A stretch of 64,000 nucleotides of DNA from IMGVR_UViG_3300037258_000590:124001-188000; one strand, 5' to 3'; shown: positions 9,513 through 55,599, counted from the first letter of the stretch. A program made the numbers and translations. The notes: generated by a model from the sequence alone, not told the origin.

Positions 9513-11401
9513 CAGCCGCCTGGCCCGCGCATCACGCCGCCGGCGGTGACCTGTTCCAGGCTGTCGGCGATCCCGGCCATGCCGCCGGCTGCCTCCCGGG
9601 CCGCCTCACCGTACCGCGGGTGCACCCCGGTCTCATCGAATCGCTCGCCGTAGCCGTGCAGCACATCCTGAAGTGCCCCGACCAGTTCGTGCAGTCCGGT
9701 CAGGCTGTCGTGCACGTCTTGCGGATCGTGGAACTCCCGGCCGCCCAGCTCCCTGATCTGCTCGGCCATCGCTCCTGTATCCATGTTTCCTCCTGACAGC
9801 GGCCACAACGGGCCGGATCTTCCTGGCATCCCCGCCGCGGAAGGCGCGGATGCGGTCTGCGGAACCGGGACGCCAGCCGGGCGGCGCTGGCGGGCCAGCC
9901 ACCGGTCCTGCCGGCGCCGGTCCAGGTTCCGCAGCCTGCTGGTGAGCCAGCTGTTGCGGTGCCGGCCGCCGTGCGCCCACGCCCTCGGAGGCCGCCGGTT
10001 GCGGCGGATCCGGCGGAACCAGGCCCGCACGGGCCGGCCGTGCCGGCTGAGGCCTGCCCGGGTGACGTGCCCGCCCAGGCCCGCCAGCCGGATCCGCAAC
10101 GGCACGTGCCGTCTGGTGCCGAGCCCGAGCCCGCGGTACTTCCGCCGCCGCAGCCAGAAACCGTGCCACCGGGTCGCTACCCTGGCCCGCCACGGCAGGC
10201 GCGTCCCGGCACGGCGGCGTTTCGCGATTGCGCGCCTGGCCTGCCGGCGGCGCATCGTAGCCCGCAAGCCGCCGCCGCGGGTCCAGATCCGCCACGGCGC
10301 CCACAACGGCACACGACGCCGGTACGGATTCCGCGCGGCTCGTTTACGCGCGGCCCGCAGCCTGACCCGGTGAGCCTTGCGCCTGCTCCGGAGATAGGCG
10401 CGCCGTTCCGGGCGGCCGATCACCTTCCAGGCCTGGCGGCGGAAAAACCCGGCCCGCTTCAGTCCGGCCGGACGGCGGAACCAGGTCCGCGGGCGGGCCA
10501 GGCGGCGGGCCCAGGTCCGCGGGCGGAACCAGGTCCGCGGGCGGAACCAGGTCCGCGGGCGGAACAGGCGGCGCAGGCGAGCTGTCCCGCCCGCGGCGCC
10601 AGCGGTACGCGGCCGTCGCCCGATGCGGAAGCGGCGCCTGCGCGCTGTCCCTCCCGCCGCCCCGCCGCCAGGACGACGGCCGCGCGGTCCGGTACCGGTG
10701 CGCGGCCGTCGCCAGGTGGACGGGCGGAGCAGGCGGCGGCGGGGAACGCGGGGAGCGGTGCCGCCTGCTCCAGTCCTTCGCCGGGTCCGGGGAGAACCCC
10801 CCGGAAGCCGGCGGATCCTGCGAAAAGCCGGCGAAGACCGCCTGGCAGTGCCGGGATTCCGCCTGGGGCCGCGGAACAGCGCTGCCCGGCGGCCGGCTCC
10901 GCTGCCGGAACGGCCGCCAGGCCCGCGCCGCGCCGCAGAACGCCTGTGCGCGCCACCGGAAGCCCCCGCACCTGTCCCGCGCCGGCGGGGGCCAGCCCCC
11001 AGCGAGCGCAGCGCACTGCGGCCCCGACCGCGGGCCCTGCTGAACATGGCACCGCCACCGCGATGCCCGGCCAGCTGGCGGAAACCCCTGCCGCGCTGGC
11101 CGGGCCAGTTGAGACTGCCGCTGGTCCGCGTCCGGGTCACCCGGGTCGAGGTCCTGGCCTGACGTTCCCGGCGGCCGAACGGATGGAAGTGCCGCTGCAA
11201 GTGCGGGTAACGGAACAAGCCGAGCAGCAGCAGCGCGCCACCCCCGGTGCCGGCCAGGACCCACATCGACAGCCGGCCGCCCATGGCATGCTCAGCGATC
11301 AGCAGGGCTCCGGCGGCGAGCAGGATAACGAGAATGACACGACGCCATCCGATCCTGCCCGCGGGGGGGTCCGGTGCGCTAGTCTCAGGACCTGTTGTCA
11401 T
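9512..11401 (-). CDS. TraA-like protein: two TM segments, long Arg-rich region, C-terminal helical module
   Basis: Continuous ORF; RPRTWF repeats near 10480-10570; in-frame internal ATG 9784 with AGGAGG RBS. Confidence 0.6.
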   Translation of the reverse strand: MTTGPETSAPDPPAGRIGWRRVILVILLAAGALLIAEHAMGGRLSMWVLAGTGGGALLLLGLFRYPHLQRHFHPFGRRERQARTSTRVTRTRTSGSLNWPGQRGRGFRQLAGHRGGGAMFSRARGRGRSALRSLGAGPRRRGTGAGASGGAHRRSAARRGPGGRSGSGAGRRAALFRGPRRNPGTARRSSPAFRRIRRLPGGSPRTRRRTGAGGTAPRVPRRRLLRPSTWRRPRTGTGPRGRRPGGGAAGGTARRRRFRIGRRPRTAGAAGGTARLRRLFRPRTWFRPRTWFRPRTWARRLARPRTWFRRPAGLKRAGFFRRQAWKVIGRPERRAYLRSRRKAHRVRLRAARKRAARNPYRRRVPLWAPWRIWTRGGGLRATMRRRQARRAIAKRRRAGTRLPWRARVATRWHGFWLRRRKYRGLGLGTRRHVPLRIRLAGLGGHVTRAGLSRHGRPVRAWFRRIRRNRRPPRAWAHGGRHRNSWLTSRLRNLDRRRQDRWLARQRRPAGVPVPQTASAPSAAGMPGRSGPLWPLSGGNMDTGAMAEQIRELGGREFHDPQDVHDSLTGLHELVGALQDVLHGYGERFDETGVHPRYGEAAREAAGGMAGIADSLEQVTAGGVMRGPGG

Positions 11402-20718: not shown

Positions 20719-20762
20719 ACCACCCACCCGTCACAGGCAGCCCGGCGACCAGCCAGCAATTA

Positions 20763-20849
20763 GGCGAAACGTTCCCACTGGTCGGAGCTTTCCGGCCACG
20801 CGGGACGTCCACGGGAGGCTGACCACCCCGTGCCGAAGATGCCAGGTCA
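20763..20849 (+). ncRNA. Type II hammerhead ribozyme HH1 (core CCGAAGA)
   Basis: GGC-GAAA; stem III ACGTTCC/GGGACGT; GUC site after 20809; stem I CACGGG/CCCGTG; CCGAAGA-T-GCC; pseudoknot TGACC/GGTCA. Confidence 0.75.
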
Positions 20850-20868
20850 CCAGACAGGAGCGAATGCA

Positions 20869-20982
20869 ATGGACGATAACCGCACAGACAGCCCCGGCCA
20901 AGGTTCCCGCCGGCCCGCGCTGGACACGTACGCCGACAGGGTGGCCGCCGCGGAAACCGTCATAGCCAATAACGGCTGGTAA
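20869..20982 (+). CDS. 37 aa peptide
   Basis: GACAGGAG RBS after HH1. Confidence 0.45.
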   Translation: MDDNRTDSPGQGSRRPALDTYADRVAAAETVIANNGW

Positions 20983-21024
20983 TCGCCGGAAGATGCCGGA
21001 TAACACAGAGCAGGAGCTGTACCA

Positions 21025-21426
21025 ATGATCACCCGCGATGACGCGCTGACCGCCGGGGAATTCCACGAGGAGCACGAGCCGGCCGGCAAGGTCTACGCCT
21101 GGCGGCGTAACGGCCAGACGCAGATCACGATGACCCGCCCGGACGATTTCCGCGTACCGGTCACGTACGGCCTGCGATCTCACCACCAGATCACGCCGGA
21201 CAACGCGCACCGCTTCCACCGCGCGGACCAGTGCCTGACGCTACGCGTCCGCGTAGCCATCCCGGACGGCGGCGGCGAATGGTACGGGATCGTGATCGAA
21301 GAATTGCTGGCAGACAACGCCGGCTACGGCGTCACGCGCGTGCACGTAACCACACGCGGAGCATCGCGCTACCGCGTCGGCTCACAGGTCGACGTCCCGA
21401 CCAAGCGACTGACCTACCTGCAGTAA
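21025..21426 (+). CDS. Phage-type conserved protein
   Basis: WRRNGQTQ...RPDDFRVPVTYGL...ITPDNAHRFH motif; stop TAA abuts HH2. Confidence 0.7.
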   Translation: MITRDDALTAGEFHEEHEPAGKVYAWRRNGQTQITMTRPDDFRVPVTYGLRSHHQITPDNAHRFHRADQCLTLRVRVAIPDGGGEWYGIVIEELLADNAGYGVTRVHVTTRGASRYRVGSQVDVPTKRLTYLQ

Positions 21427-21514
21427 GGCGAAACGTTCCCACTGGTCGGAGGTTGCTCCGGCCGGAGGGGGCGTCCACGGGCGCTGACCTTCCCGTGCCG
21501 ATGATGCCAGGTCA
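21427..21514 (+). ncRNA. Type II hammerhead ribozyme HH2 (core CCGAUGA)
   Basis: Stem III ACGTTCCC/GGGGGCGT; GUC after 21475; stem I CACGGG/CCCGTG; pseudoknot TGACC/GGTCA. Confidence 0.78.
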
Positions 21515-21536
21515 ACCAGATGAGGAGACACCAGCC

Positions 21537-21773
21537 ATGCGCGGATTCATGTTCCCGGCCACGGCCGCCATCCTGCTGCGCGAGCGGACGTGGATGCCCG
21601 ACGTGGCGATCGCCAGCTGGCTCCGCAACTACGGCAAGTCGGGAGAGCGGTTCTTCATCCAGACCACGCGGCCCGGCAACGATCACTACCTGGTCCAGCC
21701 GGCTCCAGGCGGGTTCTGCATCGTGCCGTGCCGGATGGCCCCGGGCACGCCGGCCGGGTACGTCCTGGCCTGA
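21537..21773 (+). CDS. Hypothetical protein
   Basis: GAGGAG RBS; between HH2 and HH3. Confidence 0.6.
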   Translation: MRGFMFPATAAILLRERTWMPDVAIASWLRNYGKSGERFFIQTTRPGNDHYLVQPAPGGFCIVPCRMAPGTPAGYVLA

Positions 21774-21783
21774 CTGTCCGCCA

Positions 21784-21868
21784 GGCGAAACGTTCCGACC
21801 AGTGGGAGATTCCGGCCGGCCGGAACATCCGCGGGCAATGACCTCCCCGCGCTGACGATGCCAGGTCA
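21784..21868 (+). ncRNA. Type II hammerhead ribozyme HH3 (core CUGACGA, AUC site)
   Basis: Stem III GTTCCG/CGGAAC; site after 21829; stem I CGCGGG/CCCGCG; pseudoknot intact; C15.2:A16.2 mismatch. Confidence 0.75.
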
Positions 21869-21888
21869 CGAAAGCTCAGGAGACAGAC

Positions 21889-22410
21889 ATGCCCGCATAC
21901 GACGACAACCCGGCCGTGACCGGGGATTACGTCTGGATCACGGCTGACGGCACGGCCGGGCGGCGTTCCCGCGCGGCGCAGGTCAACGCCGCCAAGCGCG
22001 CCTACGAACGCAGCCACGGCGTGACGCTGACGCTGCTTGCCAGGAGCTACAGCGAAACGTACGGCTTCTTGCACCGGTCAGCGTTCCGGTACGAGATCGG
22101 CCGGCCCGGCCAGTCTTTCACGATCACGTACATGTCCGTGCGATGCGAGGTATGGGACACCGAGCCGGGCACGTACCCGACCATGGCCGCAGCGCAAGCG
22201 CACGTACGGTCAGCGTTCCGAACCCTGTCATCATACTGCCGGGTACGGATCCACGCGCCGGCCGGCCGGCAGAGCCAGGTCGGCTCGCGTACCGGTCTCG
22301 GCCCCTGGTACTTCGAGCCGTGCCCGGCGGGCGGGCGCGTGACCCTGCGCTTCCCGGGATTCCCGCCCGTTACCTGCGCCGGCCCCTCCATCACCGCTAT
22401 CGACGCGTAA
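21889..22410 (+). CDS. Hypothetical protein
   Basis: CAGGAG RBS; stop abuts HH4. Confidence 0.65.
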   Translation: MPAYDDNPAVTGDYVWITADGTAGRRSRAAQVNAAKRAYERSHGVTLTLLARSYSETYGFLHRSAFRYEIGRPGQSFTITYMSVRCEVWDTEPGTYPTMAAAQAHVRSAFRTLSSYCRVRIHAPAGRQSQVGSRTGLGPWYFEPCPAGGRVTLRFPGFPPVTCAGPSITAIDA

Positions 22411-22495
22411 GGCGAAACGTTCCGGCCTGCCGGTTCTTCCCGCCGGCCGGAACGTCTGTGAGAGCTGACCTCCTCACACTGACGATGCCAGGTCA
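22411..22495 (+). ncRNA. Type II hammerhead ribozyme HH4 (core CUGACGA)
   Basis: Stem III ACGTTCCGGCC/GGCCGGAACGT; GUC after 22456; covaried stem I TGTGAG/CTCACA; pseudoknot intact. Confidence 0.88.
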
Positions 22496-22514
22496 CCAGA
22501 GATCAGGAGACACC

Positions 22515-22685
22515 ATGCCGAACGCCACCAGTGACCCGCGCGCCGTCGCCCGGTTCGCGACCATGCGCCGCATCCAGGCGGCTGACGCGCCGGCCCGGTA
22601 CACGCGCAGCCGTCGCCTGGCGGCCATGGGGAAGGGTTACCACGGACCGCTGACCCGCGCGGAGCTAGCCCGTCGAACGGCGTAA
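22515..22685 (+). CDS. 56 aa basic peptide
   Basis: CAGGAG RBS. Confidence 0.55.
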   Translation: MPNATSDPRAVARFATMRRIQAADAPARYTRSRRLAAMGKGYHGPLTRAELARRTA

Positions 22686-22687
22686 CA

Positions 22688-22777
22688 GGCGAAACGTCCC
22701 ACTGATCGGAGGTTACTCCGGCCAGCCGGGACGTCCGCGGGCGCTGAGCACCCCGTACCGAAGAAGATGCCGGATCA
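22688..22777 (+). ncRNA. Hammerhead HH5, degenerate
   Basis: Stem III and GUC (22735) intact; core CCGAAGA followed by extra AGA; weakened stem I and pseudoknot. Confidence 0.5.
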
Positions 22778-22789
22778 CCGGAGGTACAC

Positions 22790-23035
22790 GTGAAAATCCA
22801 GCAAGCCCACTACGACCACATGGTCACGGAGATAAATACAGCTGTAACCAGGATCGGGCCAGATAGGGTGGCCAGCTTCAAGACGCATGTATCGCCGAAA
22901 CGATACCGGTGGGACCTGCTGCGCGCCGCCAACCTCATCCCGTACGTGTGCAGCACGCTCTACCCGTACATGAAGGACGAGCACATAGACACCGCGCTGC
23001 GCCACATCGTAGCCGACCCGTCAAACAAGCTTTAG
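22790..23035 (+). CDS. Phage-type hypothetical protein
   Basis: GGAGG RBS; RYRWDLL...LYPYMKDEHIDTALRHIV. Confidence 0.65.
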   Translation: MKIQQAHYDHMVTEINTAVTRIGPDRVASFKTHVSPKRYRWDLLRAANLIPYVCSTLYPYMKDEHIDTALRHIVADPSNKL

Positions 23036-23058
23036 GCGAAACGTCCGTTCCGCGCCTA

Positions 23059-23134
23059 GGCGAAACGTTCCGATCCTCCCACCGGTCGGAACGTCTACGG
23101 GAGCTGACCTACCCGCACTGAAGATGCCAGGTCA
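23059..23134 (+). ncRNA. Type II hammerhead ribozyme HH6 (core CUGAAGA)
   Basis: Stem III ACGTTCCGA/TCGGAACGT; GUC after 23095; stem I TACGGG/CCCGCA (1 mismatch); pseudoknot intact; a duplicated GGCGAAACGT stub lies at 23035. Confidence 0.82.
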
Positions 23135-23152
23135 CCAGATGAGGAGACGGCT

Positions 23153-23737
23153 ATGAGTGATCGTGAATGGATACCGGCGGCAGACGTCCAGGTCGGCGAC
23201 CAGCTGGCCCACAAGCTGTCGAACACACCGTGGACCTACACGCCGGTTACAGGCTGGTCGGACAAGGTTCTCCACCTCGGGGGCAGCCTCGGGAACGTCA
23301 CGCAGCGCCGGTTCACCGTATCCGGGGCGCCGTGGTGGGTCACCTCAGATGCGGCCAGTCTCTGGCATTCGCTGGACGGGCAAGCACTGGTCCTGAACCT
23401 GGGCAAATACCCCGAGCCTGAACCAATGCCCGAGCCCGAGCCCGAGCCCGAGCCTGTCACGCGCATCGTCCTGGGCGATGACTACTACGGGTTCCGCATG
23501 CCGGTACCGTCCGGCTTCACCGATTACCTGCTGGCCAGCACCGACGATAAATGGGCAGTCCTGGAGTCCATCGGCATCACGCGGCGCGATGACGTCTCCC
23601 CGCTGGCCGCGTGGCGCGACGCGGTAGCCGATGAGACCGGGATTCCCCGCGCGCAGCTAGACCCGGCCCAGGGCGGCGTATTCGACATCGGGTTTACGCC
23701 CGCGTACGTCCGCAAATTCGTGTTCTTCCTGGCCTGA
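23153..23737 (+). CDS. Hypothetical protein with PE-repeat linker
   Basis: GAGGAG RBS; PEPEPMPEPEPEPEP. Confidence 0.65.
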   Translation: MSDREWIPAADVQVGDQLAHKLSNTPWTYTPVTGWSDKVLHLGGSLGNVTQRRFTVSGAPWWVTSDAASLWHSLDGQALVLNLGKYPEPEPMPEPEPEPEPVTRIVLGDDYYGFRMPVPSGFTDYLLASTDDKWAVLESIGITRRDDVSPLAAWRDAVADETGIPRAQLDPAQGGVFDIGFTPAYVRKFVFFLA

Positions 23738-23844
23738 CCCGCAAAGACGTTTCCCGGCCCTTGATCCCCCGAAGCCGGCCGGGACGGCAACCCAGGGGGG
23801 CTAACACCACCCCGCTCAGGATCATGAGACAGGAGACAGCAACC

Positions 23845-24417
23845 ATGATCAAGGTGCTAGTTCAGTCCGTCCCGGACGAAATTCCGGACGGCACGCGCTA
23901 CGAAGTCGCGGCCGGCCTGCCGGGAGACATGACCGGCTGGTTCCAGATCTCACACGCGGGCCTGGTGCTGGCCACGGGCGAGCACAACTACCACGATGAC
24001 AGCGACTTCTACGCAACCGTATGGGACGGCCAGGGGCCGCGCGAGATCACCTACGCCAGCACGCGCGGGTGGACCTATGCCAACAGTGCCACGGCAGACG
24101 CCACGCCGGAGGTACAGGCCGCCTACGGCGCGTGGCGCCAGGCCCGCGCGGGCGAGCGTCAGGCCGCAGCCACGGCAGCGGAGGCGGCCACGCCACGCGC
24201 CGGCAAGACAGTCCGGGTGGTCAGAGGCCGCAAGGTGCCCGTGGGCACTGTGGCGGAAGTCGTCTGGTACGGCGAGGGTAAGCGGTTCAGCCGCCATGCG
24301 CCAGTCCCGATGCGCGTTGGCCTGCTGACCGGCGACGAGCGCGTGTTTACTGATGCGGCCAACGTCGAAGTCGTGACGGCCGATGAGCCAGGCCACCCGA
24401 TGAGGAGACACCTGTGA
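23845..24417 (+). CDS. Phage-type conserved protein
   Basis: GACAGGAG RBS; HNYHDDSDFYATVWD and GKTVRVVRGRKVPVGT motifs. Confidence 0.7.
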   Translation: MIKVLVQSVPDEIPDGTRYEVAAGLPGDMTGWFQISHAGLVLATGEHNYHDDSDFYATVWDGQGPREITYASTRGWTYANSATADATPEVQAAYGAWRQARAGERQAAATAAEAATPRAGKTVRVVRGRKVPVGTVAEVVWYGEGKRFSRHAPVPMRVGLLTGDERVFTDAANVEVVTADEPGHPMRRHL

Positions 24418-24755
24418 AAGTCATCAAAGAGATTGACCACGATCCCCGCACTGTTCGCGAGGTCCGTGTGTTCGTCCGTCAGTACATTTTCGTTGACGGT
24501 GTATCCAGCTACGACGTCCACCTGTCCGAGCTGCGGTACCGCAGCTCAGACGGTGAGCTGACCGACTGCCTGACACTGGACGACAGCTTTAGCCACGTGC
24601 CCGGAGACGCTGAAATAGAAGCCCTGCCGTACATCGCTCCCAGCGTACGGCGCGAGGCCCCCGGGGTGTTCTACATCCTGACCGGGCCTTACCGGAAAGG
24701 CCCGTACGCAAACCGCAGGGAGGCTAACGCGGACATCAGGGCTGGCCGCTGGTAA
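24414..24755 (+). CDS. Hypothetical protein
   Basis: GAGGAG RBS; GTGA overlap. Confidence 0.6.
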   Translation: MKVIKEIDHDPRTVREVRVFVRQYIFVDGVSSYDVHLSELRYRSSDGELTDCLTLDDSFSHVPGDAEIEALPYIAPSVRREAPGVFYILTGPYRKGPYANRREANADIRAGRW

Positions 24756-24779
24756 CCCCCTGCGCACTACCACTAGCCA

Positions 24780-24855
24780 GGCGAAACATTTCGATTCTCC
24801 CACTGGTCGGAACGTCCGCGAGAGCTAACCTGCCCGCGCCGATGATGCCAGGTCA
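24780..24855 (+). ncRNA. Type II hammerhead ribozyme HH7 (core CCGAUGA)
   Basis: Stem III ACATTTCGA/TCGGAACGT (1 mismatch); GUC after 24816; stem I CGCGAG/CCCGCG; loop TAACC vs tail GGTCA. Confidence 0.68.
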
Positions 24856-24876
24856 CGAGATAAGGAGACAGGTTCT

Positions 24877-25169
24877 GTGATCTACCAGGTCGGCCGGTTC
24901 ACCCGCGACCAGTTCACATCGGACGCCGCTTTCCACGCGGCGATCAGGTGCCAGATGATCAGTTGCCCCGAGCTGTACCCCGAGCTGGCAGAGGCCGCCG
25001 CCGAGACCGAGCGGCTGGCACCCAAGATCCGCAAGACCGGAAAGAAGACATCATGAACCCCTACCTGGTCCGCGACGAGAACGGCGAGCCGGTCATGCGG
25101 TTGGTCGAACGTGACCGCTACGGCCGGTTCTGCCGACCTTACTACGCCTACATCTGGAAGACATCATGA
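24877..25169 (+). CDS. Two coupled small ORFs (24877-25056 and 25053-25169)
   Basis: AAGGAG RBS; ATGA overlaps; both end KTS. Confidence 0.5.
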
Positions 25170-26473
25170 GCGTCAGCCTTAGCGCGGCAGCATCGGTCCG
25201 GCAGCACGCGGAGCGCCTGGAGAAGGATATCCGCAACCAGGCCAAAACCGTAGCCTACGACCTGACCATGTGCGCCCAAGCCGTGTTACGCGTGCGATCA
25301 GCCGGTCAAGTAACCCAGGAAGAAGAGAAGGCTATGGAAGCTAGCAAACTGAGCGCCGCCTACACCAGCGGCCCGCCGCACCCGCTCGCCGCCCGGCCGC
25401 GCGAGTACACCGGCCCGATGGCCCCGGACCACAAGCTGGGCGGCATCTACGCCATCATGGACCGGCACGGCATGCTGCCGGACGGACCGGGCGGGATCGC
25501 CTGCCTGCGGTGCGCGAAGCCGCTCAACGCTGACGGCGGCCACCCCGCTGAGCTGTACGCCGGGACATACAACGGCCTGTGCTACCCGTGCACCTCGGCG
25601 CCGGCATTCGTGGCCCGCACGGCCGTCCTGGACGGCGCCCGGGAGGTGTCCTGGCCGCCGCACTGCCCGTCGTGGCGCCGGGACCGCGAGAAGCACATTG
25701 CCTATGAAGGCTGCCCGGCCTGCGACGGCCTAGGCATCACCCTGGGCACCCGGACCTACAGCAGCGGCGGCCGGTCATGCGAGCCGTGCCGGACCCGGTT
25801 CTGCGGCCACCCGGTACGCGCGGCGGCCAGCCGGTGGAACGAGCAGGCCATGCGGTCTTGCCAGGCCGCCTTCGACCAGGCCATCGACCAGGCCGCGGGC
25901 GTGCCAGCACGATGCACCAGGAAACGTCGCACCGAGCTGCGTGAGGCGTTCATCGGCCTCGCCGGGAACGGCCGCTCGCCGGAATGCGAAGCGCTGCGCC
26001 TGGCTCACCTGGCTGGCTACTGGCGCATCCGCGCGCTTATCCGCGCGCACTTCGAGGCGCGAGGCTGGAACCAGTGGTCAGATACCAGCAACGATGAGGC
26101 GTGGGCCAGGGCGTACTGCACCTGGCGCGGACTGGATTATGACGCGCTGGCCGCCGGCGAGCCCCAGCCCGGACCGCCTGAGCCCCAGCCCGAACCGCCT
26201 GGGCCGGAAAACCCGCAAGCCGGGCGGATCGCCGTGCTACGGGCCCTGACCTTCGAGCGGGCCGAGGAGTGGTGGCGTACCGGCCGGATCAGTACCGACG
26301 AGTGGGAGGCGTTCGGTTACGCCTGGCGGCGCGGCGCCGTCCGCTTCTCCGGCGTCGGCGCCGGTTTCGAGCACCCCGTCTCGCAAAAGGTGCGCGAGCT
26401 GGGCAACGCCATCATGGGCGGCAATGCACCAGGCACCTGCCCGTGCCCGGCGGGCGAGAACTGCACCCTGTGA
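25166..26473 (+). CDS. Multi-CxxC hypothetical protein
   Basis: CLRC, CYPC, CPAC, CEPC motifs; ATGA overlap. Confidence 0.65.
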   Translation: MSVSLSAAASVRQHAERLEKDIRNQAKTVAYDLTMCAQAVLRVRSAGQVTQEEEKAMEASKLSAAYTSGPPHPLAARPREYTGPMAPDHKLGGIYAIMDRHGMLPDGPGGIACLRCAKPLNADGGHPAELYAGTYNGLCYPCTSAPAFVARTAVLDGAREVSWPPHCPSWRRDREKHIAYEGCPACDGLGITLGTRTYSSGGRSCEPCRTRFCGHPVRAAASRWNEQAMRSCQAAFDQAIDQAAGVPARCTRKRRTELREAFIGLAGNGRSPECEALRLAHLAGYWRIRALIRAHFEARGWNQWSDTSNDEAWARAYCTWRGLDYDALAAGEPQPGPPEPQPEPPGPENPQAGRIAVLRALTFERAEEWWRTGRISTDEWEAFGYAWRRGAVRFSGVGAGFEHPVSQKVRELGNAIMGGNAPGTCPCPAGENCTL

Positions 26474-26514
26474 AGCGACCCAGCATCACCCCGTAACTAC
26501 CGAAAGGCCCTGAA

Positions 26515-26763
26515 ATGTCTGACCGGTCTGAGCTGGCTACTCCATCCGGGTACGCCGGCGTTGAATACACGGACGGTAAGGTGCACGCCATCGACCTGGA
26601 CACGCTGCACGGTGAGACGCCGGCGTACCCGCGCGGGATGCCGTTGTGGCGCGAACCCGTGGTGTGCGGGGCCGCTAGTGGCGTGTCCAGCGATGAGGGC
26701 GGTCCTGCCGCGTTGCACCGCAAGACGCTCACCTGCTGGATGTGCGTCTCCATCCTGGCCTGA
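26515..26763 (+). CDS. Hypothetical protein
   Basis: Array orientation; LTCWMC. Confidence 0.55.
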   Translation: MSDRSELATPSGYAGVEYTDGKVHAIDLDTLHGETPAYPRGMPLWREPVVCGAASGVSSDEGGPAALHRKTLTCWMCVSILA

Positions 26764-26817
26764 GATCTTCCCACTGGTCGGAGCTTCCGGCCGGGCTGCT
26801 TACGACAGGAAAACCAC

Positions 26818-27060
26818 ATGACTGAATTCATCAGCGGCTACCGGGACCGCGCGGGCATTGACTCACGCGCCAATTCCGCGCTACTGCGCATTGCCGCGAT
26901 CAGCGCGGACGTGTACGTGCCGGCCGCCGTGCGTCTCGCGCAGGTCGCGCAGGTCATGGCGGGCGAGCCGATCCTCACGGACCCGTGCCCGGCCGCACGC
27001 ACCGTACGCGCGGAGCTTGCCGGCCGCACCGCTCTGCAAGACAGAGGGCTGACCTCATGA
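26818..27060 (+). CDS. Hypothetical protein
   Basis: GACAGGAA RBS. Confidence 0.55.
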   Translation: MTEFISGYRDRAGIDSRANSALLRIAAISADVYVPAAVRLAQVAQVMAGEPILTDPCPAARTVRAELAGRTALQDRGLTS

Positions 27061-27109
27061 AACTACACGCGGTAATCGAGCAGCCGTCACTGACCGTGGA
27101 ACAGCAACA

Positions 27110-27589
27110 ATGACAGGAGATCCCGTGAACCAGCCCGTACCTCCGCGCAAGCGGACCCTTTCCGACCTGGAGATCAACCGGTACGCCATGTTCCTGCCGT
27201 ACCTGCCAGCCGAGGAAAACAACGACGCGGAAGCGATGCCGTGCATCGTGCTGGGCAGCGACGAGGACGGCAACGGCGGCGTGCAGGTGTACGCCTACTC
27301 CGAGAACGGCGTAGTCCGGATCAGCGTGCACACCTACTCAGCCGGACCAGACGAGAACGGGGACGGCCCGTGGGCTTACTACGACCAGGGGCATGAGCGC
27401 GTGATCCCGGTCGTCATCGACGTCTACGACGCAGTGCCTGTAGGGCAGGCGACAGCTGAGGTGAACCCGCTCGGGCAGCCGCTCTGGGTGCCGTCAGCCG
27501 GGCTGGCCTACGCGGGCGTGCCACTGGACCAGATCCCGGACGACGGCCAGCGTGCCGCCGTGGCGCGTCACCGCGAGGCGGACCTGTGA
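27110..27589 (+). CDS. Hypothetical protein with C-terminal LAYAGVPLDQIPDDGQRAAV module
   Basis: Module shared with 51384-51731. Confidence 0.6.
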   Translation: MTGDPVNQPVPPRKRTLSDLEINRYAMFLPYLPAEENNDAEAMPCIVLGSDEDGNGGVQVYAYSENGVVRISVHTYSAGPDENGDGPWAYYDQGHERVIPVVIDVYDAVPVGQATAEVNPLGQPLWVPSAGLAYAGVPLDQIPDDGQRAAVARHREADL

Positions 27590-27780
27590 GCGGCAGGGAC
27601 AAGCTCAACGCCCAACCGGACGAGGACCCGGCACTGAACACGCGTATCGCAGAGCTGGAAGCCGAACAGCAGGCCGCGATCACGGCTGGCACGATCAGCG
27701 CATGGGAGCGGACGCCGGCATGCGCAGAACTGGACCGGCTGCGCGACGAGCGCGGCTACCGGCCGGGTACTGCCGGATAG
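27586..27780 (+). CDS. Small hypothetical protein
   Basis: GTGA overlap; stop overlaps HH8. Confidence 0.55.
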   Translation: MSGRDKLNAQPDEDPALNTRIAELEAEQQAAITAGTISAWERTPACAELDRLRDERGYRPGTAG

Positions 27781-27864
27781 GCGAAACGTCCAGCCGGCAG
27801 GAAACTTCCGGCTCGCAGGAACATCCATGAGAGCTGACCGTCTCACGGAGATGATGCCAGGTCA
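27780..27864 (+). ncRNA. Hammerhead HH8 with mutated core (GAGAUGA), probably inactive
   Basis: Stem II, pseudoknot and stem I CATGAG/CTCACG retained; C3 and U4 substituted. Confidence 0.55.
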
Positions 27865-27881
27865 CCACGACAGGAGCTGAC

Positions 27882-28436
27882 ATGAGACTGCACACGAACC
27901 TGACCGCAGACAATATCCGGACATGCCTGGACCAGGCCAAGGCAGGCGACATACCCAGTGACATCGTGTTCGACGTATTCGGTGAAACCGGTTCCAGGTC
28001 GCATCCGCACGGCTTCGAGGTCCACCTGGCCAGCACGCAGAAGAACACGCGCGATGATGGCGTGACCCGTAGGACCAACCCCATGGCCAGGCACGACGGC
28101 CCGCGCTACGCCGCGAGCTACGACGAATGGGGCTGGTTCCTAGCCGAGCTGTTCGCGGCAGACCGGGCCGCCAAAGCAGGCCCGTACAAGAACGAAGACG
28201 ATTTCCACGTCAAGACCAGGCACGCCTATACGCCCATGGGCAGGGCCCAGCTGCCGCCGGACCACGCGGGCGACCTGGAGCCGGCCCGCGCCGAGCCGGA
28301 CACCGAGCCGGTCAGCGACGCGAGGCTGCCCGTCATCGAGCGGATCGATGCCGTACTGGCCGATTACCCGCCTGACCCGGTTGTGTTCGGATCCAGCCCA
28401 GCACACCTCTCGTTGCGTCCGCGGATGCCGGTATGA
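27882..28436 (+). CDS. Phage-type hypothetical protein
   Basis: GACAGGAG RBS; GSRSHPHGFEVHL, AASYDEWGWFLAELF. Confidence 0.7.
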   Translation: MRLHTNLTADNIRTCLDQAKAGDIPSDIVFDVFGETGSRSHPHGFEVHLASTQKNTRDDGVTRRTNPMARHDGPRYAASYDEWGWFLAELFAADRAAKAGPYKNEDDFHVKTRHAYTPMGRAQLPPDHAGDLEPARAEPDTEPVSDARLPVIERIDAVLADYPPDPVVFGSSPAHLSLRPRMPV

Positions 28437-28489
28437 GATTACGGTCAGCCCGCGACAAAAGCACAGCAGTGAAAAAGGAAGAGACGATC

Positions 28490-28894
28490 ATGGTGATGAA
28501 CATCCAGGAAGAGGCAGCCAGTCTCAACGATGAACAGCTCGGGCGAGAGGTTGGCGCTATGGCGCTAGCTCGCGCCCTGGATACGCGAAAGGGATCGCGC
28601 GAGCGGGCGTTCCTTGACGAGATCCACCAGCGGCATCCCGAGCTGTGCCGGTGTCCGGCCCGGGAGCGGTCTCACTGGCTACACCAGCGGGTTAACGACC
28701 CGTACGGCACCAGCAACCGTCACCCGTTCTGGGAGACGGTCAGCTTCGAGCAGGTAGGCCCGTGGCGCATCTTCAAGCGGGATGCCGCCTGGTACGGCTA
28801 CGAGACCCGGCAGAACGCGTGGACGACCGCCCGGCCATCCCGCGATGACATCATCAAGCATGCCGCCGGGCCGCACGTTGATATCTGGGCCTGA
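28490..28894 (+). CDS. Hypothetical protein
   Basis: AAGGAAGAG RBS. Confidence 0.6.
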   Translation: MVMNIQEEAASLNDEQLGREVGAMALARALDTRKGSRERAFLDEIHQRHPELCRCPARERSHWLHQRVNDPYGTSNRHPFWETVSFEQVGPWRIFKRDAAWYGYETRQNAWTTARPSRDDIIKHAAGPHVDIWA

Positions 28895-28991
28895 CCGCTG
28901 ACCGACAGGCCGCGCAAGCGCGCCGCGGCGCTAGCGCAACGTTCTAACCGGTCGGAGCTTTTCCGGCCGCTCAACGACAGGAGACTGATGC

Positions 28992-29561
28992 GTGATGAAG
29001 ACCGTGCAGACCGTACCTGATGCGCTGGCCAGCGTGAACGCAGCTCAAAGCGCACCCGTGCAATTCGAGCCAGGGCCTCTCCATACACTGGTCGCACTGC
29101 GTCACATAGCCCGTGAGCTGACCGCGCTGCGTGACCTGGCCGCAGCGGTGCGAGCCGCGCTGGCCGTACCGTCTGACGCAGATGAGCTGGCCGACGCGGC
29201 GGACCGGGAAGCACGCAGCATGGCCCCGCCCGTACCCGGTGTTACCCGCGTGGGCGGCTACGTGGTCCGGGCACTCATCACGACCCCCGGCCGGAACACC
29301 GCATGGTTCGTCGCGGCCGAAGGTGACAGCGAGCACAGCACCGGACGCTGGTCCACCTGGCGGGCCGAGCAGGATTCCACCGGGCACCTGCTGTTCAGCT
29401 GCGCCCGGTTCTTTAACGTCCGGGCGGGGCTGACCGCGGCGGATATCCAGGCTGACTTGCACAATGAGCCTGAAACCTGGCGCCCCGACAGGCCGCACAA
29501 CCGCACCGCGGCGCTAGCCAGCCTGGCCGGACGAGCGGGCATCACGCCGGCCGCGGAATAG
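28992..29561 (+). CDS. Hypothetical protein, paralogue of the C-terminal domain of 35117-36286
   Basis: ARSMAPPVPGVTRVGGYVVRA...WFVAAE...WSTW. Confidence 0.65.
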   Translation: MMKTVQTVPDALASVNAAQSAPVQFEPGPLHTLVALRHIARELTALRDLAAAVRAALAVPSDADELADAADREARSMAPPVPGVTRVGGYVVRALITTPGRNTAWFVAAEGDSEHSTGRWSTWRAEQDSTGHLLFSCARFFNVRAGLTAADIQADLHNEPETWRPDRPHNRTAALASLAGRAGITPAAE

Positions 29562-29622
29562 GCGAAACGCCCCCGCCAGCCGGGGTTTTTCCGGCCGCGC
29601 TATGACAGGAGAACAGCACACC

Positions 29623-30009
29623 ATGGACGAAACCCCTGGCCGAACCGAGGTGTTCCGCGTCCCGGACAACACGCCGGCTCCAGACCAGGCGTTCTACACA
29701 ATCACCCCCGAAGATGCCGGCCAGCACGAAATCCGCACCACCGCCGGGGTTATCGAAGTCCCCGATGGCATCTCTCCCGCCCGGACGGGACCTTTCCAGC
29801 TCGCAGACGCCGGAACGCGCCTGTACGGCATGGCGAGCCAAGCCTGGCCCGGCACGGGCTGGTACTGGACGACCACGCCTCATGAAACCTGCGCAGTATG
29901 CGGAAGCCAGCTAGACCATACCGGCATCCGCGGACGCAACGATGAGTTCGTGCACCTGGATGACGACCACGAGGATCACGCCCCGGTCCGGCTCCGTTCT
30001 GAGCAGTAG
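29623..30009 (+). CDS. Hypothetical protein
   Basis: GACAGGAG RBS; CAVC motif. Confidence 0.6.
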   Translation: MDETPGRTEVFRVPDNTPAPDQAFYTITPEDAGQHEIRTTAGVIEVPDGISPARTGPFQLADAGTRLYGMASQAWPGTGWYWTTTPHETCAVCGSQLDHTGIRGRNDEFVHLDDDHEDHAPVRLRSEQ

Positions 30010-30064
30010 TCACAGTAACCGCTGAATACTGCGGCCGGATACGGACGTAGACGACCAGACGATA

Positions 30065-30150
30065 GGCGAAACGTTCTGGCCAGCCGGAAATTTCCGCGTG
30101 GCCAGAACGTCCGCGGGGGCTGACCTCCTCGCGCTGATGATGTCAGGTCA
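30065..30150 (+). ncRNA. Type II hammerhead ribozyme HH9 (canonical CUGAUGA)
   Basis: 12-bp stem III ACGTTCTGGCCA/TGGCCAGAACGT; GUC after 30111; stem I CGCGGGGG/TCCTCGCG; stem II GTC/GGC; pseudoknot TGACC/GGTCA. Confidence 0.9.
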
Positions 30151-30167
30151 TAGAACAGGAGCTGATC

Positions 30168-30356: not shown

Positions 30357-30366
30357 CAGTCCATCA

Positions 30367-30453
30367 GGCGAAACGTTCTGACCAGCCGGAGATTTTCCGC
30401 GTGGCCAGGACGTCCGCGGAGGCTGACCGCCTCGCGCTGATGATGCCAGGTCA
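30367..30453 (+). ncRNA. Type II hammerhead ribozyme HH10 (canonical CUGAUGA)
   Basis: Stem III ACGTTCTG/CAGGACGT; GUC after 30414; stem I CGCG..AGG/CCTCGCG; pseudoknot intact. Confidence 0.88.
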
Positions 30454-30471
30454 CGAACAGGAGCGCAGATC

Positions 30472-32945: not shown

Positions 32946-32946
32946 A

Positions 32947-33022
32947 GGAACGTCCGACCAGTCGGAACTTCCGGCTGGCCGGCACACCCCGCAGGCACTA
33001 ACCGGCCTGTGATGCCGGGTCA
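32947..33022 (+). repeat. Decayed hammerhead HH11
   Basis: GGAACGTCCG...hairpin...CCTGTGATGCCGGGTCA; GAAA and CUGA core segments damaged. Confidence 0.55.
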
Positions 33023-33041
33023 GCTAAGACAGGAGCAGGTT

Positions 33042-33660: not shown

Positions 33661-34722
33661 ATGTCAGGAATTTCCCTGCACGTATCTGTCCGGTCAATAC
33701 AAGATCTGCTCGCAGATGTGCCGCGGCTGACTGGTTTCACGCCAGCCAACAGCCTGGTCATCATCGGAGCAAAGCCCCCGCATGACCGCGTGTGCGTCAC
33801 GCTCCGGTACGACATGCCCGCCGGCGCCGAGACGATAGCCGGGACGCTTGCGCACGCCAGCGACGTCCTGGCCGGCGCGGATGCCACCAGCGTGGCCGCG
33901 GTGATCTACGGAACGCAGGAGCAGGCGGCGCCGATCGTGGCCGGACTGGCCAGCCTGACGGAACTCCAGGCAGAACTCCAGGTCACCGAGGTCATCAGGG
34001 TAGACGCAGGCCGGTACTGGTCGTATACCTGCGATGACCCTGATTGCTGCCCGCCAGAAGGCACCAAGTTCACTGTTGGCGACGTTGCCGGCCTGGCAGT
34101 CCCGGTACTGGCTGACCGGGAAACGCTGGCGGCCACGCTGGCGCCGGTCACGGGAGCGAGTGCGGAATCGATGCGGGCAGCAACGCAAAAGGCCGAGCAG
34201 CCTGTCAGCTTGCCGTCAACCGTACACGCCGGGGCAGCCCGTGCATGGCAGCGTGCTACCGCAACTAGCGGGCTGCGTAACAGCCAGGATCTTCTCCGGC
34301 GCTACCGCGCAGGCAATTACGTCATGTCCGACGACGAGGCAGCGCGGATCACGGTGGCGCTGAGCAGCCTGCGGGTTCGCGATGACTTGTGGGCAAGGAT
34401 GGACCCCGCCCACGCCAAAGCTCACCTCGTGCTGCTCACCGACCTGACCCGGCGCGCTCAGCCAGGATACGTAGCAGCCCCGGCAGGCGTACTCGCATTC
34501 GTCGCCTGGCAGTCCGGGAACGGTGCGCTAGCCAATATCGCACTAGACCGGGCGCTGGCCGACCAGCCCAGGTATTCAATGGCGCAGCTGCTGCGCCAGG
34601 TCATCACCGCCGGGGCACCGCCTTCGATGGCCCGGCTGCCGATGACACCAGAGGAGGTTGCCCTCACCTTCGATGAGATGGATGACGAAGCCGACCTAGA
34701 GGACGAGGCCAGCGAAGAGTAA
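33661..34722 (+). CDS. DUF4192 domain protein
   Basis: DLLADVPRLTGFTPANSLVIIG...RVRD...LAFVAWQSGNGALANIALDRALADQPRYSMAQLL. Confidence 0.85.
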   Translation: MSGISLHVSVRSIQDLLADVPRLTGFTPANSLVIIGAKPPHDRVCVTLRYDMPAGAETIAGTLAHASDVLAGADATSVAAVIYGTQEQAAPIVAGLASLTELQAELQVTEVIRVDAGRYWSYTCDDPDCCPPEGTKFTVGDVAGLAVPVLADRETLAATLAPVTGASAESMRAATQKAEQPVSLPSTVHAGAARAWQRATATSGLRNSQDLLRRYRAGNYVMSDDEAARITVALSSLRVRDDLWARMDPAHAKAHLVLLTDLTRRAQPGYVAAPAGVLAFVAWQSGNGALANIALDRALADQPRYSMAQLLRQVITAGAPPSMARLPMTPEEVALTFDEMDDEADLEDEASEE

Positions 34723-34723
34723 A

Positions 34724-34813
34724 GGTGAAACGTCCCGCTGGCCGGAGCTTCCGGCCGGCGGGGCGTCCGCGAGAGCCAGCCGCCTCGCCGACCTGAACCG
34801 CTCGGAGGATGCC
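34724..34813 (+). ncRNA. Hammerhead-like HH12 with an insertion in the core
   Basis: GGT-GAAA; stem III ACGTCCCGC/GCGGGGCGT; GUC after 34767; CCGA-[16 nt]-GA-T-GCC. Confidence 0.45.
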
Positions 34814-38023: not shown

Positions 38024-38102
38024 CGGCGAAACGTCCCGCCGGCCGGAACTTCCGGATAGCGGGGCGTCCGCGGGGGATAGCCGCCTCGCGCTGATGATGC
38101 CG
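38024..38102 (+). ncRNA. Type II hammerhead ribozyme HH13 (CUGAUGA, 4-bp stem II, no pseudoknot)
   Basis: CGGC/GCCG stem II; stem III ACGTCCCGC/GCGGGGCGT; GUC after 38068; stem I CGCGGGG/CCTCGCG. Confidence 0.78.
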
Positions 38103-38347
38103 AACCGTTTTTTATGACAGGAGTGCTGATCGTGATCGGTATTTGCATCGGGTTTACGCGAATCGGTGAGGCGGCGACATGGCGGGAGGCCATGGCCGCT
38201 TGCACGACCTGGGCGAGTTCATGAAGTCGGCGGCCGGTTTCGAACAGCGGGGCTGGCACGGGTTCGCCGCGGACTCGGCGGTCAGCGGGGTTCTGGTCCG
38301 GCTGATCGATGACGAGACGGTGCAGACCGGTTTCGCGGTGAGCTGAG

Positions 38348-40184: not shown

Positions 40185-40240
40185 CGGCGAAACGTCCCGC
40201 CGGCCGGAACTTCCGGATAACGGGGCGTCCCTGAGGGCCG
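40185..40240 (+). repeat. 5' half of a hammerhead (HH14), truncated
   Basis: Nearly identical to the first 46 nt of HH13; no CUGANGA downstream. Confidence 0.65.
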
Positions 40241-40346
40241 GCCGCCTGCCGGACGGCAGCCTGTACGTCGTGATCCTGAGCACCCTGGACCAGCGCACCA
40301 GCACGTAAGTCAGCACCAGCAGCAGCACAAGACAGGAGAACCCGTA

Positions 40347-52462: not shown

Positions 52463-52526
52463 CCCGCCGCTGGCAATGCCGGGCCAGCACGAGAACACGC
52501 AAGACACGCAGACAGGAGAAGCATTC

Positions 52527-55199: not shown

Positions 55200-55599
55200 C
55201 CTGAACCTGGACGCACGGGTAACGATAGAGCGGCTGACCAGCCTGGTCTCGGCCATCGCGCTGGGGATCCAGCTCCCGGCAGCGGAAACAATTCCAGCGC
55301 ACTCACTGCCGGGCTACCTCCCTGCCGGAACAGGGGCGGTAACCCGCGCACGCGCAGCACTGACGCGTGCGTTCAGCGTGACCTGGCCGCACCCTGACTG
55401 GGGAACGATCATCCCGGCCCTGGCCGAAGCCGAACAGTACCTGCGTGACGCCGGGCTGATGCGCAAGCCGGAGCTTATGCAGTTCGTGCACCTGGCTGCG
55501 CGAGCTGCCAGCCAGCGCCGGGGCGACGACACCCGGGCGTACATCGATAACATCCGCGGCTACCTGCCAGCTGAAGACAACGAAAAAGAGGGCCCATGA
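55192..55599 (+). CDS. Hypothetical protein
   Basis: Overlaps flanking stop and start codons. Confidence 0.55.
   Translation: MPDLNLDARVTIERLTSLVSAIALGIQLPAAETIPAHSLPGYLPAGTGAVTRARAALTRAFSVTWPHPDWGTIIPALAEAEQYLRDAGLMRKPELMQFVHLAARAASQRRGDDTRAYIDNIRGYLPAEDNEKEGP

What the first reader, a model, noticed from the sequence alone, without database searches (positions are those of the whole stretch)
20833..30150. Recurring core variants: U4-to-C, variable N7, extra U after A9
HH1, HH2, HH5 and HH7 have CCGANGA instead of CUGANGA. N7 is U, C or A. Every copy has an extra U between A9 and G10.1, and most have only a 3-bp stem II. An extra nucleotide at this position is known in natural viroid hammerheads (e.g. 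CChMVd plus strand). Recurrence of U4-to-C suggests it is tolerated; different cores might tune cleavage rate, and so expression, gene by gene (inference).
Basis: partly seen in the sequence, partly recalled or inferred. Interest (0 to 1): 0.6.

Follow-up and report, generated by a model that had tools for sequence, protein, structure and literature searches.

The report
Phage hammerhead array with C4 cores
A 210-kb soil phage carries a row of self-cleaving hammerhead RNAs between its small genes, and in this phage lineage one supposedly fixed core base (U4) is freely U or C, which suggests the ribozyme still works with C there, although no cleavage has been measured.

Summary
The window (bases 124001-188000 of a 210,383-bp IMG/VR phage genome) holds 11 full-length type II hammerhead copies plus 5 relics. 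All are on the + strand and intergenic, between a stop codon and the next Shine-Dalgarno site. Nine copies keep an otherwise consensus core.

CCGANGA occurs in the copies at 20762, 21426, 22687 and 24779. N7 is U, C or A. A U follows A9 in every copy, and stem II is GGC/GCC.

- **Ordinary features:** the extra U, the 3-bp stem II and the loop I/3'-tail pseudoknot form a common architecture in phage type II hammerheads. Variable N7 is part of the consensus.
- **Unusual feature:** C4 is lineage-specific. A collinear 190-kb relative has C4 in 12 of 15 copies. Across 68 intact copies (two genomes plus soil metagenome contigs) position 4 is C in 38 and U in 30, while every other core base is 68/68.
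- **Evidence C4 is tolerated:** C4 copies keep 96% canonical pairs with compensatory changes. C4 is conserved at four orthologous sites and swapped for U at one.

Gene-by-gene tuning is not supported. Cleavage activity is untested.

The parts
20762..20850 (+). HH1. Type II hammerhead with core CCGAAGA-U (C4 at 20834). Predicted cleavage is after C20809 (GUC). The helices and the 5-bp pseudoknot (UGACC/GGUCA) are intact.
21426..21515 (+). HH2. Core CCGAUGA-U (C4 at 21499), cleavage after C21475, helices intact. It is sister to HH1. The UAA stop of ORF 21025-21426 ends on its first base.
21783..21869 (+). HH3. Core CUGACGA-U, cleavage after C21829 (AUC). It has one C.A mismatch at 15.2-16.2.
22410..22496 (+). 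HH4. Core CUGACGA-U, cleavage after C22456, all helices intact. It has the best R1 score (100.5 bits).
22687..22778 (+). HH5. Degenerate copy: CCGAAGA is followed by AGAU before stem II. It also has a C.A mismatch at 1.1-2.1 and a mismatched pseudoknot.
23034..23057 (+). 5' fragment of a copy (AGGCGAAACGUCCG...) lying directly upstream of HH6.
23058..23135 (+). HH6. Core CUGAAGA-U, cleavage after C23095, short stem III. The A.C mismatch in stem I (23097) is G-C in two other soil strains.
24779..24856 (+). HH7. Core CCGAUGA-U (C4 at 24840), cleavage after C24816. It has A.C mismatches in stem III, stem I and the pseudoknot.
27779..27865 (+). HH8. Copy with a broken core (GGAGAUGA, C3/U4 lost) and several stem mismatches.
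29560..29600 (+). Half copy: GGCGAAAC plus a hairpin followed by UUUUU. It is the only + strand terminator-like site in 14-33 kb.
30064..30151 (+). HH9. Core CUGAUGA-U, stem II GGC/GUC, cleavage after C30111, 6-bp pseudoknot.
30366..30454 (+). HH10. Core CUGAUGA-U, cleavage after C30414.
32946..33024 (+). Relic. Both core strands are deleted, but the hairpins and the pseudoknot-like tail are kept.
34723..34801 (+). Relic. GGUGAAAC and both hairpins are kept; CUGANGA is deleted.
38024..38108 (+). HH11. The only copy above the Rfam gathering score. Core CUGAUGA-U, 4-bp stem II, no detectable pseudoknot, U6 downstream.
40185..40269 (+). Relic related to HH11, with CUGANGA lost.

Best explanation
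The region is an array of type II hammerhead self-cleaving ribozymes in the accessory (ORFan) gene module of a 210-kb soil phage.

**Arrangement (shown).** Each unit starts at or within two bases of the upstream stop codon. Each unit ends about 6-10 nt before the next Shine-Dalgarno site.

**Mechanism (inferred).**
- The long + strand transcript cuts itself after C17. This releases single-gene mRNAs.
- The 3' end of each released mRNA is the long G+C-rich stem III hairpin with a 2',3'-cyclic phosphate.
- The 5' end is a 5'-OH followed by stem I locked to the tail by the pseudoknot, 54-63 nt before the start codon.
- These ends would uncouple the stability of neighbouring messages.

**Core variants.**
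- The extra U after A9, the 3-bp GCC/GGC stem II and the pseudoknot are the normal build of a widespread class of phage hammerheads (shown).
- The peculiarity of this lineage is that position 4 of the U-turn is a pyrimidine (C or U) rather than U (shown).
- C4 is a tolerated, near-neutral or mildly attenuating state that has switched with U several times. It is not a mark of decay and not a gene-specific setting (inferred).
- A minority of copies (HH5, HH8 and the relics) really are decaying (shown).

**Shown versus inferred overall.** Sequence, structure, covariation, conservation and distribution are shown. Self-cleavage, its rate in C4 copies and the effect on mRNA fate are inferred.
For: **Identity and structure**
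- Rfam hits to RF02276.
- Covariation in stems I and III and in the pseudoknot. The pseudoknot pair is A-U in the window and G-C in relative G001, 10:16, with none unpaired.

**Placement**
- All copies are on the + strand and intergenic.
- Stop codons overlap the first bases of the element.
- Cleavage site to start codon is 54-63 nt.
- There is no + strand terminator-like site in 14-33 kb other than a relic.

**Precedent**
- Clustered prophage hammerheads cleave ~2-kb polycistronic transcripts in vitro.
- The Agrobacterium set also cleaves in vivo when expressed in E. coli (PMC3088659).
- The pseudoknot is needed for speed.

**C4**
- G001 is a collinear relative with core proteins at 40-86% aa identity. 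It has 12 C4 copies of 15.
- Across 68 intact copies, position 4 is C in 38 and U in 30. C3, G5, A6, G8, A9, G12-A14, A15.1, U16.1 and C17 are all 68/68.
- C4 copies show 95.9% canonical pairs, with compensatory changes at 10 of 18 helix positions. U4 copies show 95.1%.
- C4 is kept at four orthologous sites between phages of about 70-78% nt identity.
- HH2 (C4) and its orthologue (U4) differ by two compensatory stem I changes.
- The tree needs at least 3 U/C switches, and 10 on the best tree.
- C4 persists in other soil strains.

**Extra U**
- It is common elsewhere.
- It is absent in 5 copies of the lineage, including C4 copies.
Against: - No cleavage data exist for any copy. No RNA run holds the phage.
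- Mutagenesis of a tertiary-stabilised hammerhead found low activity for all single mutants in the CUGA turn (PMC9901934).
- The viroid U4C variant is much slower in vitro (PMC3088659). C4 copies may therefore cleave slowly.
- HH5 and HH7, two of the four C4 copies in the window, carry additional defects.
- Copies cluster by phage. Gene conversion could therefore help preserve cores independently of function.
- The metagenome sample was drawn with a C4 pattern, so its C4 share is biased upward.
Confidence: 0.72

Rival explanations
1. Gene-by-gene tuning. C4, N7 identity and stem strength are set separately for each gene to fix cleavage rate and so expression level.
For: - Core and helix quality differ between copies.
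- U4C is known to slow cleavage, so C4 and U4 units would probably differ in rate.
- N7 = G never occurs with C4: 0 of 38 against 8 of 30.
Against: - The state is not tied to the gene. Orthologous HH2 (C4) and L325:2040 (U4) precede the same ORF.
- Homologous ORFs at window 23153 and G001 5313 follow U4 and C4 copies respectively.
- Presence of a hammerhead itself varies between homologous genes.
- C4 follows copy clades and is the default in G001, at 12 of 15.
Confidence: 0.13
2. C4 copies are catalytically dead. They are kept only as hairpin and pseudoknot elements (3'/5' stabilisers or nuclease sites), or they are on the way to becoming relics.
For: - All single mutants of the U-turn had low activity in a deep mutational scan.
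- The window shows a decay series: HH7 with mismatches, HH5 with an insertion, HH8 with a broken core, and three relics that keep the hairpins but have lost the cores.
Against: - Where catalysis is evidently lost (the relics), the core is quickly deleted. In 38 C4 copies every other catalytic base is invariant.
- The helices of C4 copies are as good as those of U4 copies.
- C4 is conserved across orthologues of about 70-78% nt identity.
- The viroid U4C variant remains infectious.
Confidence: 0.1
3. The elements are selfish intergenic repeats that spread by recombination or duplication inside these phages. Self-cleavage is irrelevant to gene expression.
For: - Copies cluster by genome (99/96 support).
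- Fragments and tandem partial copies exist, for example at 23034.
- Density reaches 15 copies in 8.6 kb in one contig.
- Presence varies between homologous genes.
Against: - Strict orientation with the genes.
- Fixed placement from stop codon to Shine-Dalgarno site, with 54-63 nt to the start codon.
- Invariant catalytic bases and compensatory helix changes. These show selection on the ribozyme fold, not just on a repeat.

Spread by duplication is compatible with the main explanation.
Confidence: 0.05

Closest known systems
Clustered type II hammerheads of prophages (Perreault et al. 2011, PMC3088659; Rfam RF02276)
   Same: - Type II topology.
- Loop I/3'-tail pseudoknot.
- Short stem II.
- Several ribozymes flanking single genes or short gene blocks in phage DNA.
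- The same proposed role in cutting polycistronic RNA.
   Different: - Position 4 is C in about half of the copies.
- A U follows A9 in most copies.
- Stem III is long.
- Only 1 of 11 window copies reaches the Rfam gathering score.
- The host genome is an uncultured 210-kb soil phage.
Natural U4C variant of a viroid hammerhead (Ambros and Flores 1998, as cited in PMC3088659)
   Same: The same substitution in the U-turn. It is reported as much slower in vitro yet sufficient in vivo.
   Different: - The viroid case is a single variant of a type III viroid ribozyme.
- Here C4 is a stable, recurrent state in dozens of type II copies, conserved between phages.
CChMVd (+) hammerhead with extra A10 between A9 and G10.1 (De la Pena and Flores 2001, via PMC3705267 and PMC1636495)
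   Same: An extra base at the same place. U there gave a 3-4 fold faster trans-cleavage.
   Different: - Here the base is U, not A.
- It is common in phage type II hammerheads generally.
- It is optional within the lineage (absent in 5 of 68 copies).
Natural A6C hammerhead variants that prefer Mn2+ (PMC7151607)
   Same: A natural single-base core variant found in phage contexts that changes reaction conditions rather than abolishing activity.
   Different: The position is different. No metal or pH data exist for C4.

Membership tests
Hammerhead ribozyme, type II (Rfam RF02276) | Three helices around a junction, with the open ends in stem II (order: stem II 3' strand, GAA, stem III hairpin, H17, stem I hairpin, CUGANGA, stem II 5' strand) | tested here: met
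   - Rfam alignments.
- The MFE folds of most copies give the junction.
- 93.9% of cells pair, and 13 of 24 pairs covary in 26 copies.
Hammerhead ribozyme, type II (Rfam RF02276) | Conserved core C3 U4 G5 A6 N7 G8 A9 / G12 A13 A14 / A15.1-U16.1 / H17 | tested here: inconclusive
   - All positions are 68/68 in the lineage except position 4 (C 38, U 30).
- In the window, six copies have the full consensus. HH1, HH2 and HH7 differ only at U4. HH5 and HH8 are broken.
Hammerhead ribozyme, type II (Rfam RF02276) | Score at or above the family's gathering threshold (37 bits) | tested here: inconclusive
   - Only the copy at 38024 passes (39.6 bits).
- The others score 19.5-34.6 bits. They lose score to the long stem III, the extra bases after A9 and C4.
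Hammerhead ribozyme, type II (Rfam RF02276) | Tertiary contact between stem I and stem II regions (pseudoknot of loop I with the 3' tail) | tested here: met
   - UGACC(U)/(A)GGUCA in the window against UGGCC(U)/(A)GGCCA in G001.
- The central pair switches A-U to G-C, with no unpaired cell.
- No pseudoknot was found in the copy at 38024.
Hammerhead ribozyme, type II (Rfam RF02276) | Site-specific self-cleavage giving 2',3'-cyclic phosphate and 5'-OH ends | not testable with these tools
   Only DNA runs (soil metagenomes, kept as contigs) hold the phage.
Phage/prophage clustered hammerheads (Perreault 2011) | Several ribozymes in one orientation flanking genes of a phage transcription unit | tested here: met
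   - 11 copies plus 5 relics on the + strand between + strand ORFs at 20.7-40.3 kb.
- 15 copies lie in the matching module of G001.

The most novel reading that the evidence does not exclude
In this phage lineage C4 is selected rather than merely tolerated. Cytosine lacks the N3-H through which U4 is expected to bond the A6-N7 phosphate. C4 hammerheads would therefore be slower or conditional (dependent on pH or metal ion) versions of the ribozyme. A mix of C4 and U4 units along one transcript would then give timed or condition-dependent release of individual mRNAs during infection.
Probability: 0.15. Interest if true: 0.7.

Novelty: new variant of a known kind. Interest (0 to 1): 0.45.

Why it matters
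U4 is treated as an invariant hammerhead core base. Searches commonly reject hits that lack it, and laboratory mutants at this position are poor.

This lineage has dozens of copies with C or U at that position, and every other catalytic base is fixed. It offers a natural, matched set for asking how the U-turn tolerates cytosine in a pseudoknot-stabilised scaffold. It also argues for using CYGANGA descriptors in phage searches.

The data add large, dense examples (up to 15 units per genome module) to the still unexplained habit of phages of placing hammerheads between genes.

Tried and rejected
**Searches that found nothing useful**
- A 14-base tail pattern scanned over IMG/VR gave 117 loci, all chance matches with no hammerhead.
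- The exact two-part pattern with the GGUCA tail found nothing outside the phage's own genome.
- A blastn search of one copy against 50,697 phage records gave only chance hits.
- A distant DNA match to Caulobacter jumbo phages (Bertelyvirus) covers one ORF only, and phage RB23 has no type II hammerhead.
- A tblastn search with the AAA_25 protein found no cultured relative.
- The one hit of the C4 pattern in prokaryote genomes (an Acidimicrobiia MAG) lacks stem I and is a chance match.
- Pfam and PHROGs give no function for the ten flanking ORFs scanned.
- Neither phage encodes RtcB or an RNA_ligase-family (PF09414) enzyme that could rejoin the ends.
- No RNA run holds the phage, so cleavage in vivo could not be read.

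**Ideas considered and dropped**
- *C4 is compensated by the extra U.* C4 also occurs without the extra U.
- *C4 is compensated by the 1.1-2.1 pair.* The association holds only inside one clade and is absent among the window-type copies.
- *C4 is a sequencing error.* It is present in independent soil runs.

**Papers not available**
- Two cited papers (PMC147498, PMC2271363) are not held. What I say about them rests on citing papers.
Full report
**What the window is.** The window is bases 124001-188000 of a 210,383-bp IMG/VR virus record. The record has direct terminal repeats and is rated complete. It is about 66% G+C. From roughly 16 kb onward it is packed with small + strand ORFs.
- Ten ORFs next to the elements have no Pfam family and almost no PHROG match.
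- Elsewhere in the window there are DUF4192, AAA_25 and LAGLIDADG_3 proteins.
- The DNA is found only in soil metagenome runs.
- No cultured relative was found.

**The observation.** Rfam's Hammerhead_II model matches the + strand at 38024 above threshold. It matches below threshold at 30064, 30366, 22410, 23058, 21426 and 21783, and at 20762 and 22687 in the whole-genome search.

A motif scan and a covariance model built from nine copies (R1) give the full list.
- **Full-length copies** start at 20762, 21426, 21783, 22410, 22687, 23058, 24779, 27779, 30064, 30366 and 38024.
- **Core-less relics** lie at 32946, 34723 and 40185.
- **Partial copies:** a half copy at 29560 and a 5' fragment at 23034.

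Nothing similar lies elsewhere in the genome.

The layout of each unit is: A-GGC, GAA, a long stem III hairpin, (G/A)UC, a stem I hairpin, CYGANGA, U, GCC, A, GGUCA.
- CCGANGA occurs in HH1, HH2, HH5 and HH7.
- N7 is U, C or A.
- A U precedes G10.1 in every copy.
- Stem II is 3 bp.

There are three corrections.
- HH5 has AGAU, not a single U, after A9, and it has further mismatches.
- HH8 has lost C3/U4.
- HH7 has A.C mismatches in stem III, stem I and the pseudoknot.

**The structure is real.**
- Among the nine window copies, eight pairs change on both sides (0/500 shuffles).
- In 26 copies from two phages, 93.9% of cells pair against 32-39% for slid partners, and 13 of 24 pairs covary.
- The central pseudoknot pair is A-U in the window and G-C in the relative, with no unpaired cell.

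**Placement.**
- The upstream stop codon overlaps the first one or two bases of several units (UAA|GGC, UAG|GC).
- A Shine-Dalgarno site follows the pseudoknot tail within about 6-10 nt.
- The predicted cleavage site lies 54-63 nt before the start codon in all 11 copies.
- The only + strand terminator-like site in 14-33 kb is the half copy at 29560.

This fits one long transcript cut into single-gene mRNAs.
- Perreault et al. proposed this role for prophage hammerhead clusters. Their clusters cleaved ~2-kb transcripts in vitro. The Agrobacterium set also cleaved in vivo when expressed in E. coli (PMC3088659).
- The products would end in the stem III hairpin with a cyclic phosphate. They would begin with a 5'-OH and the stem I/pseudoknot fold. 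The effect on stability is my inference.

**Which features are ordinary.**
- N7 is variable by definition.
- Stems II of one or two pairs, and the loop I/tail pseudoknot, are described for type II hammerheads.
- A scan of IMG/VR for GGCGAAAC...CYGANGAUGCC returned more than 117 loci. After a stem check, at least 39 distinct U4 hammerheads from many unrelated contigs have the same extra U, GCC/GGC stem II and A-plus-tail pseudoknot.
- Unselected neighbours in those arrays often lack the U: 9 without, 3 with U and 1 with A.
- The extra base has a viroid precedent, and U there was the fastest variant (PMC3705267).

The extra U is therefore a common, optional variant.

**Which feature is not ordinary.** An exhaustive IMG/VR scan for the C4 form of this architecture gave 105 stretches. 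Those that fold as hammerheads all lie in one 190-kb contig, G001, apart from one weak, doubtful candidate (L181).

G001 is a collinear relative of the window's phage. Its core proteins are 40-86% identical. The hammerhead module sits in the matching variable region. G001 has 15 copies:
- 12 with CCGAYGA;
- one with CUGAUGA;
- two with CUGAAUGA.

A metagenome scan added 15 soil loci with 45 more distinct copies. These loci were chosen for holding a C4 copy, so their C4 share is biased upward.

Over 68 intact copies:
- position 4 is C in 38 and U in 30;
- C3, G5, A6, G8, A9, G12, A13, A14, A15.1, U16.1 and C17 are each 68/68;
- the base after A9 is U in 59, absent in 5 and another base in 4.

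**Evidence that C4 is compatible with function.**
- C4 copies pair as well as U4 copies (95.9% against 95.1%) and show compensatory changes at 10 of 18 helix positions.
- Copies cluster by phage (99/96 support), yet both phages carry both states.
- The 68-copy tree needs 10 U/C switches, with at least 3 forced by well-supported branches.
- In the window, HH1 and HH2 are sisters, which counts as one event. HH7 is a separate event.
- At orthologous sites, C4 is kept in four G001/metagenome pairs of about 70-78% nt identity.
- HH2 (C4) faces a U4 orthologue that differs by two compensatory stem I changes before the same gene.
- Strains in two other soil runs keep C4 in HH1, HH2 and HH7. One SNP there restores a G-C pair in HH6.

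**What this means.** Where catalysis has evidently been lost (the relics), the core strands are deleted while the hairpins survive. C4 copies do not look like that, so most of them are very probably working ribozymes.

How fast they cleave is unknown.
- A deep mutational scan found low activity for all single mutants in the CUGA turn (PMC9901934).
- The viroid U4C variant is slow in vitro but viable.
- U4 interacts with the A6-N7 phosphate. Cytosine cannot donate that bond in the same way unless it is protonated or uses its amino group. That last point is my inference.

**Compensation and tuning.**
- I found no compensating change. C4 occurs with and without the extra U, and its link to a U-A closing pair of stem I holds in one clade only.
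- Gene-specific tuning is not supported. The state differs at orthologous and homologous genes and follows copy clades.
- Only kinetics can settle the tuning question.
- A 2026 survey of RNA viromes already searched with a CYGANGA descriptor and noted C/U degeneracy at that position. That degeneracy was allowed by its own descriptor (PMC13481778).

**Verdict.** This is a known kind of element (phage type II hammerhead arrays) in a new lineage, with a well-supported natural C4 core variant. It is moderately interesting and easy to test.

Noticed in passing
window 32946-33024, 34723-34801, 40185-40269: Relics of the same element. They have lost the GAAA and/or CUGANGA strands but keep both hairpins, and in one case the pseudoknot-like tail. 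They form a decay series next to intact copies.
   Followed up: partly
window 29560-29600: A half copy (GGCGAAAC plus hairpin) followed by UUUUU. It is the only + strand terminator-like site in 14-33 kb.
   Followed up: partly
window 21424-21428, 22408-22412, 27778-27782, 29559-29563: The stop codon of the upstream ORF overlaps the first one or two bases of the hammerhead (UAA|GGC or UAG|GC). Many G001 copies show the same arrangement. A terminating ribosome would sit on stem II and the GAAA strand.
   Followed up: partly
L253 3105-3192 and 3505-3594 (G001): Two copies have CUGAAUGA, with an extra A between A6 and G8. Perreault et al. reported this kind of insertion as giving low activity.
   Followed up: no
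G001 (L253, L254, L302-L309); window 14902, 21812, 22258, 22718, 32971: The hairpin CCGGYYRRCCGG, which forms the tip of stem III, also stands alone in many intergenic regions of G001. There are 40 hits in G001 and 11 in the window's genome.
   Followed up: partly
window 23097: In two other soil runs this A is G, which restores a G-C pair in stem I of HH6. The window's strain carries an A.C mismatch there.
   Followed up: yes
window 38024-38125: The only copy above the Rfam threshold has a 4-bp stem II and no detectable pseudoknot. A run of six U lies 5 nt after stem II.
   Followed up: partly
L325 (Ga0307478_10005789, 8.6 kb) and L315: Soil contigs related to the window at about 73-81% nt identity. 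They carry 15 and 11 hammerheads, about one per 500-600 bp. Some of these lack the extra U, and some have N7 = G.
   Followed up: partly
window 55596-57668; 33661-34722; 52476-53867: A 690-aa ORF has a LAGLIDADG_3 domain (possible homing endonuclease or intein). There is also a DUF4192 protein and an AAA_25 (DnaB/RepA-like) protein.
   Followed up: no
window 10522-10565: GGCGGAAC recurs every 18 nt, a short tandem repeat inside long ORFs.
   Followed up: no
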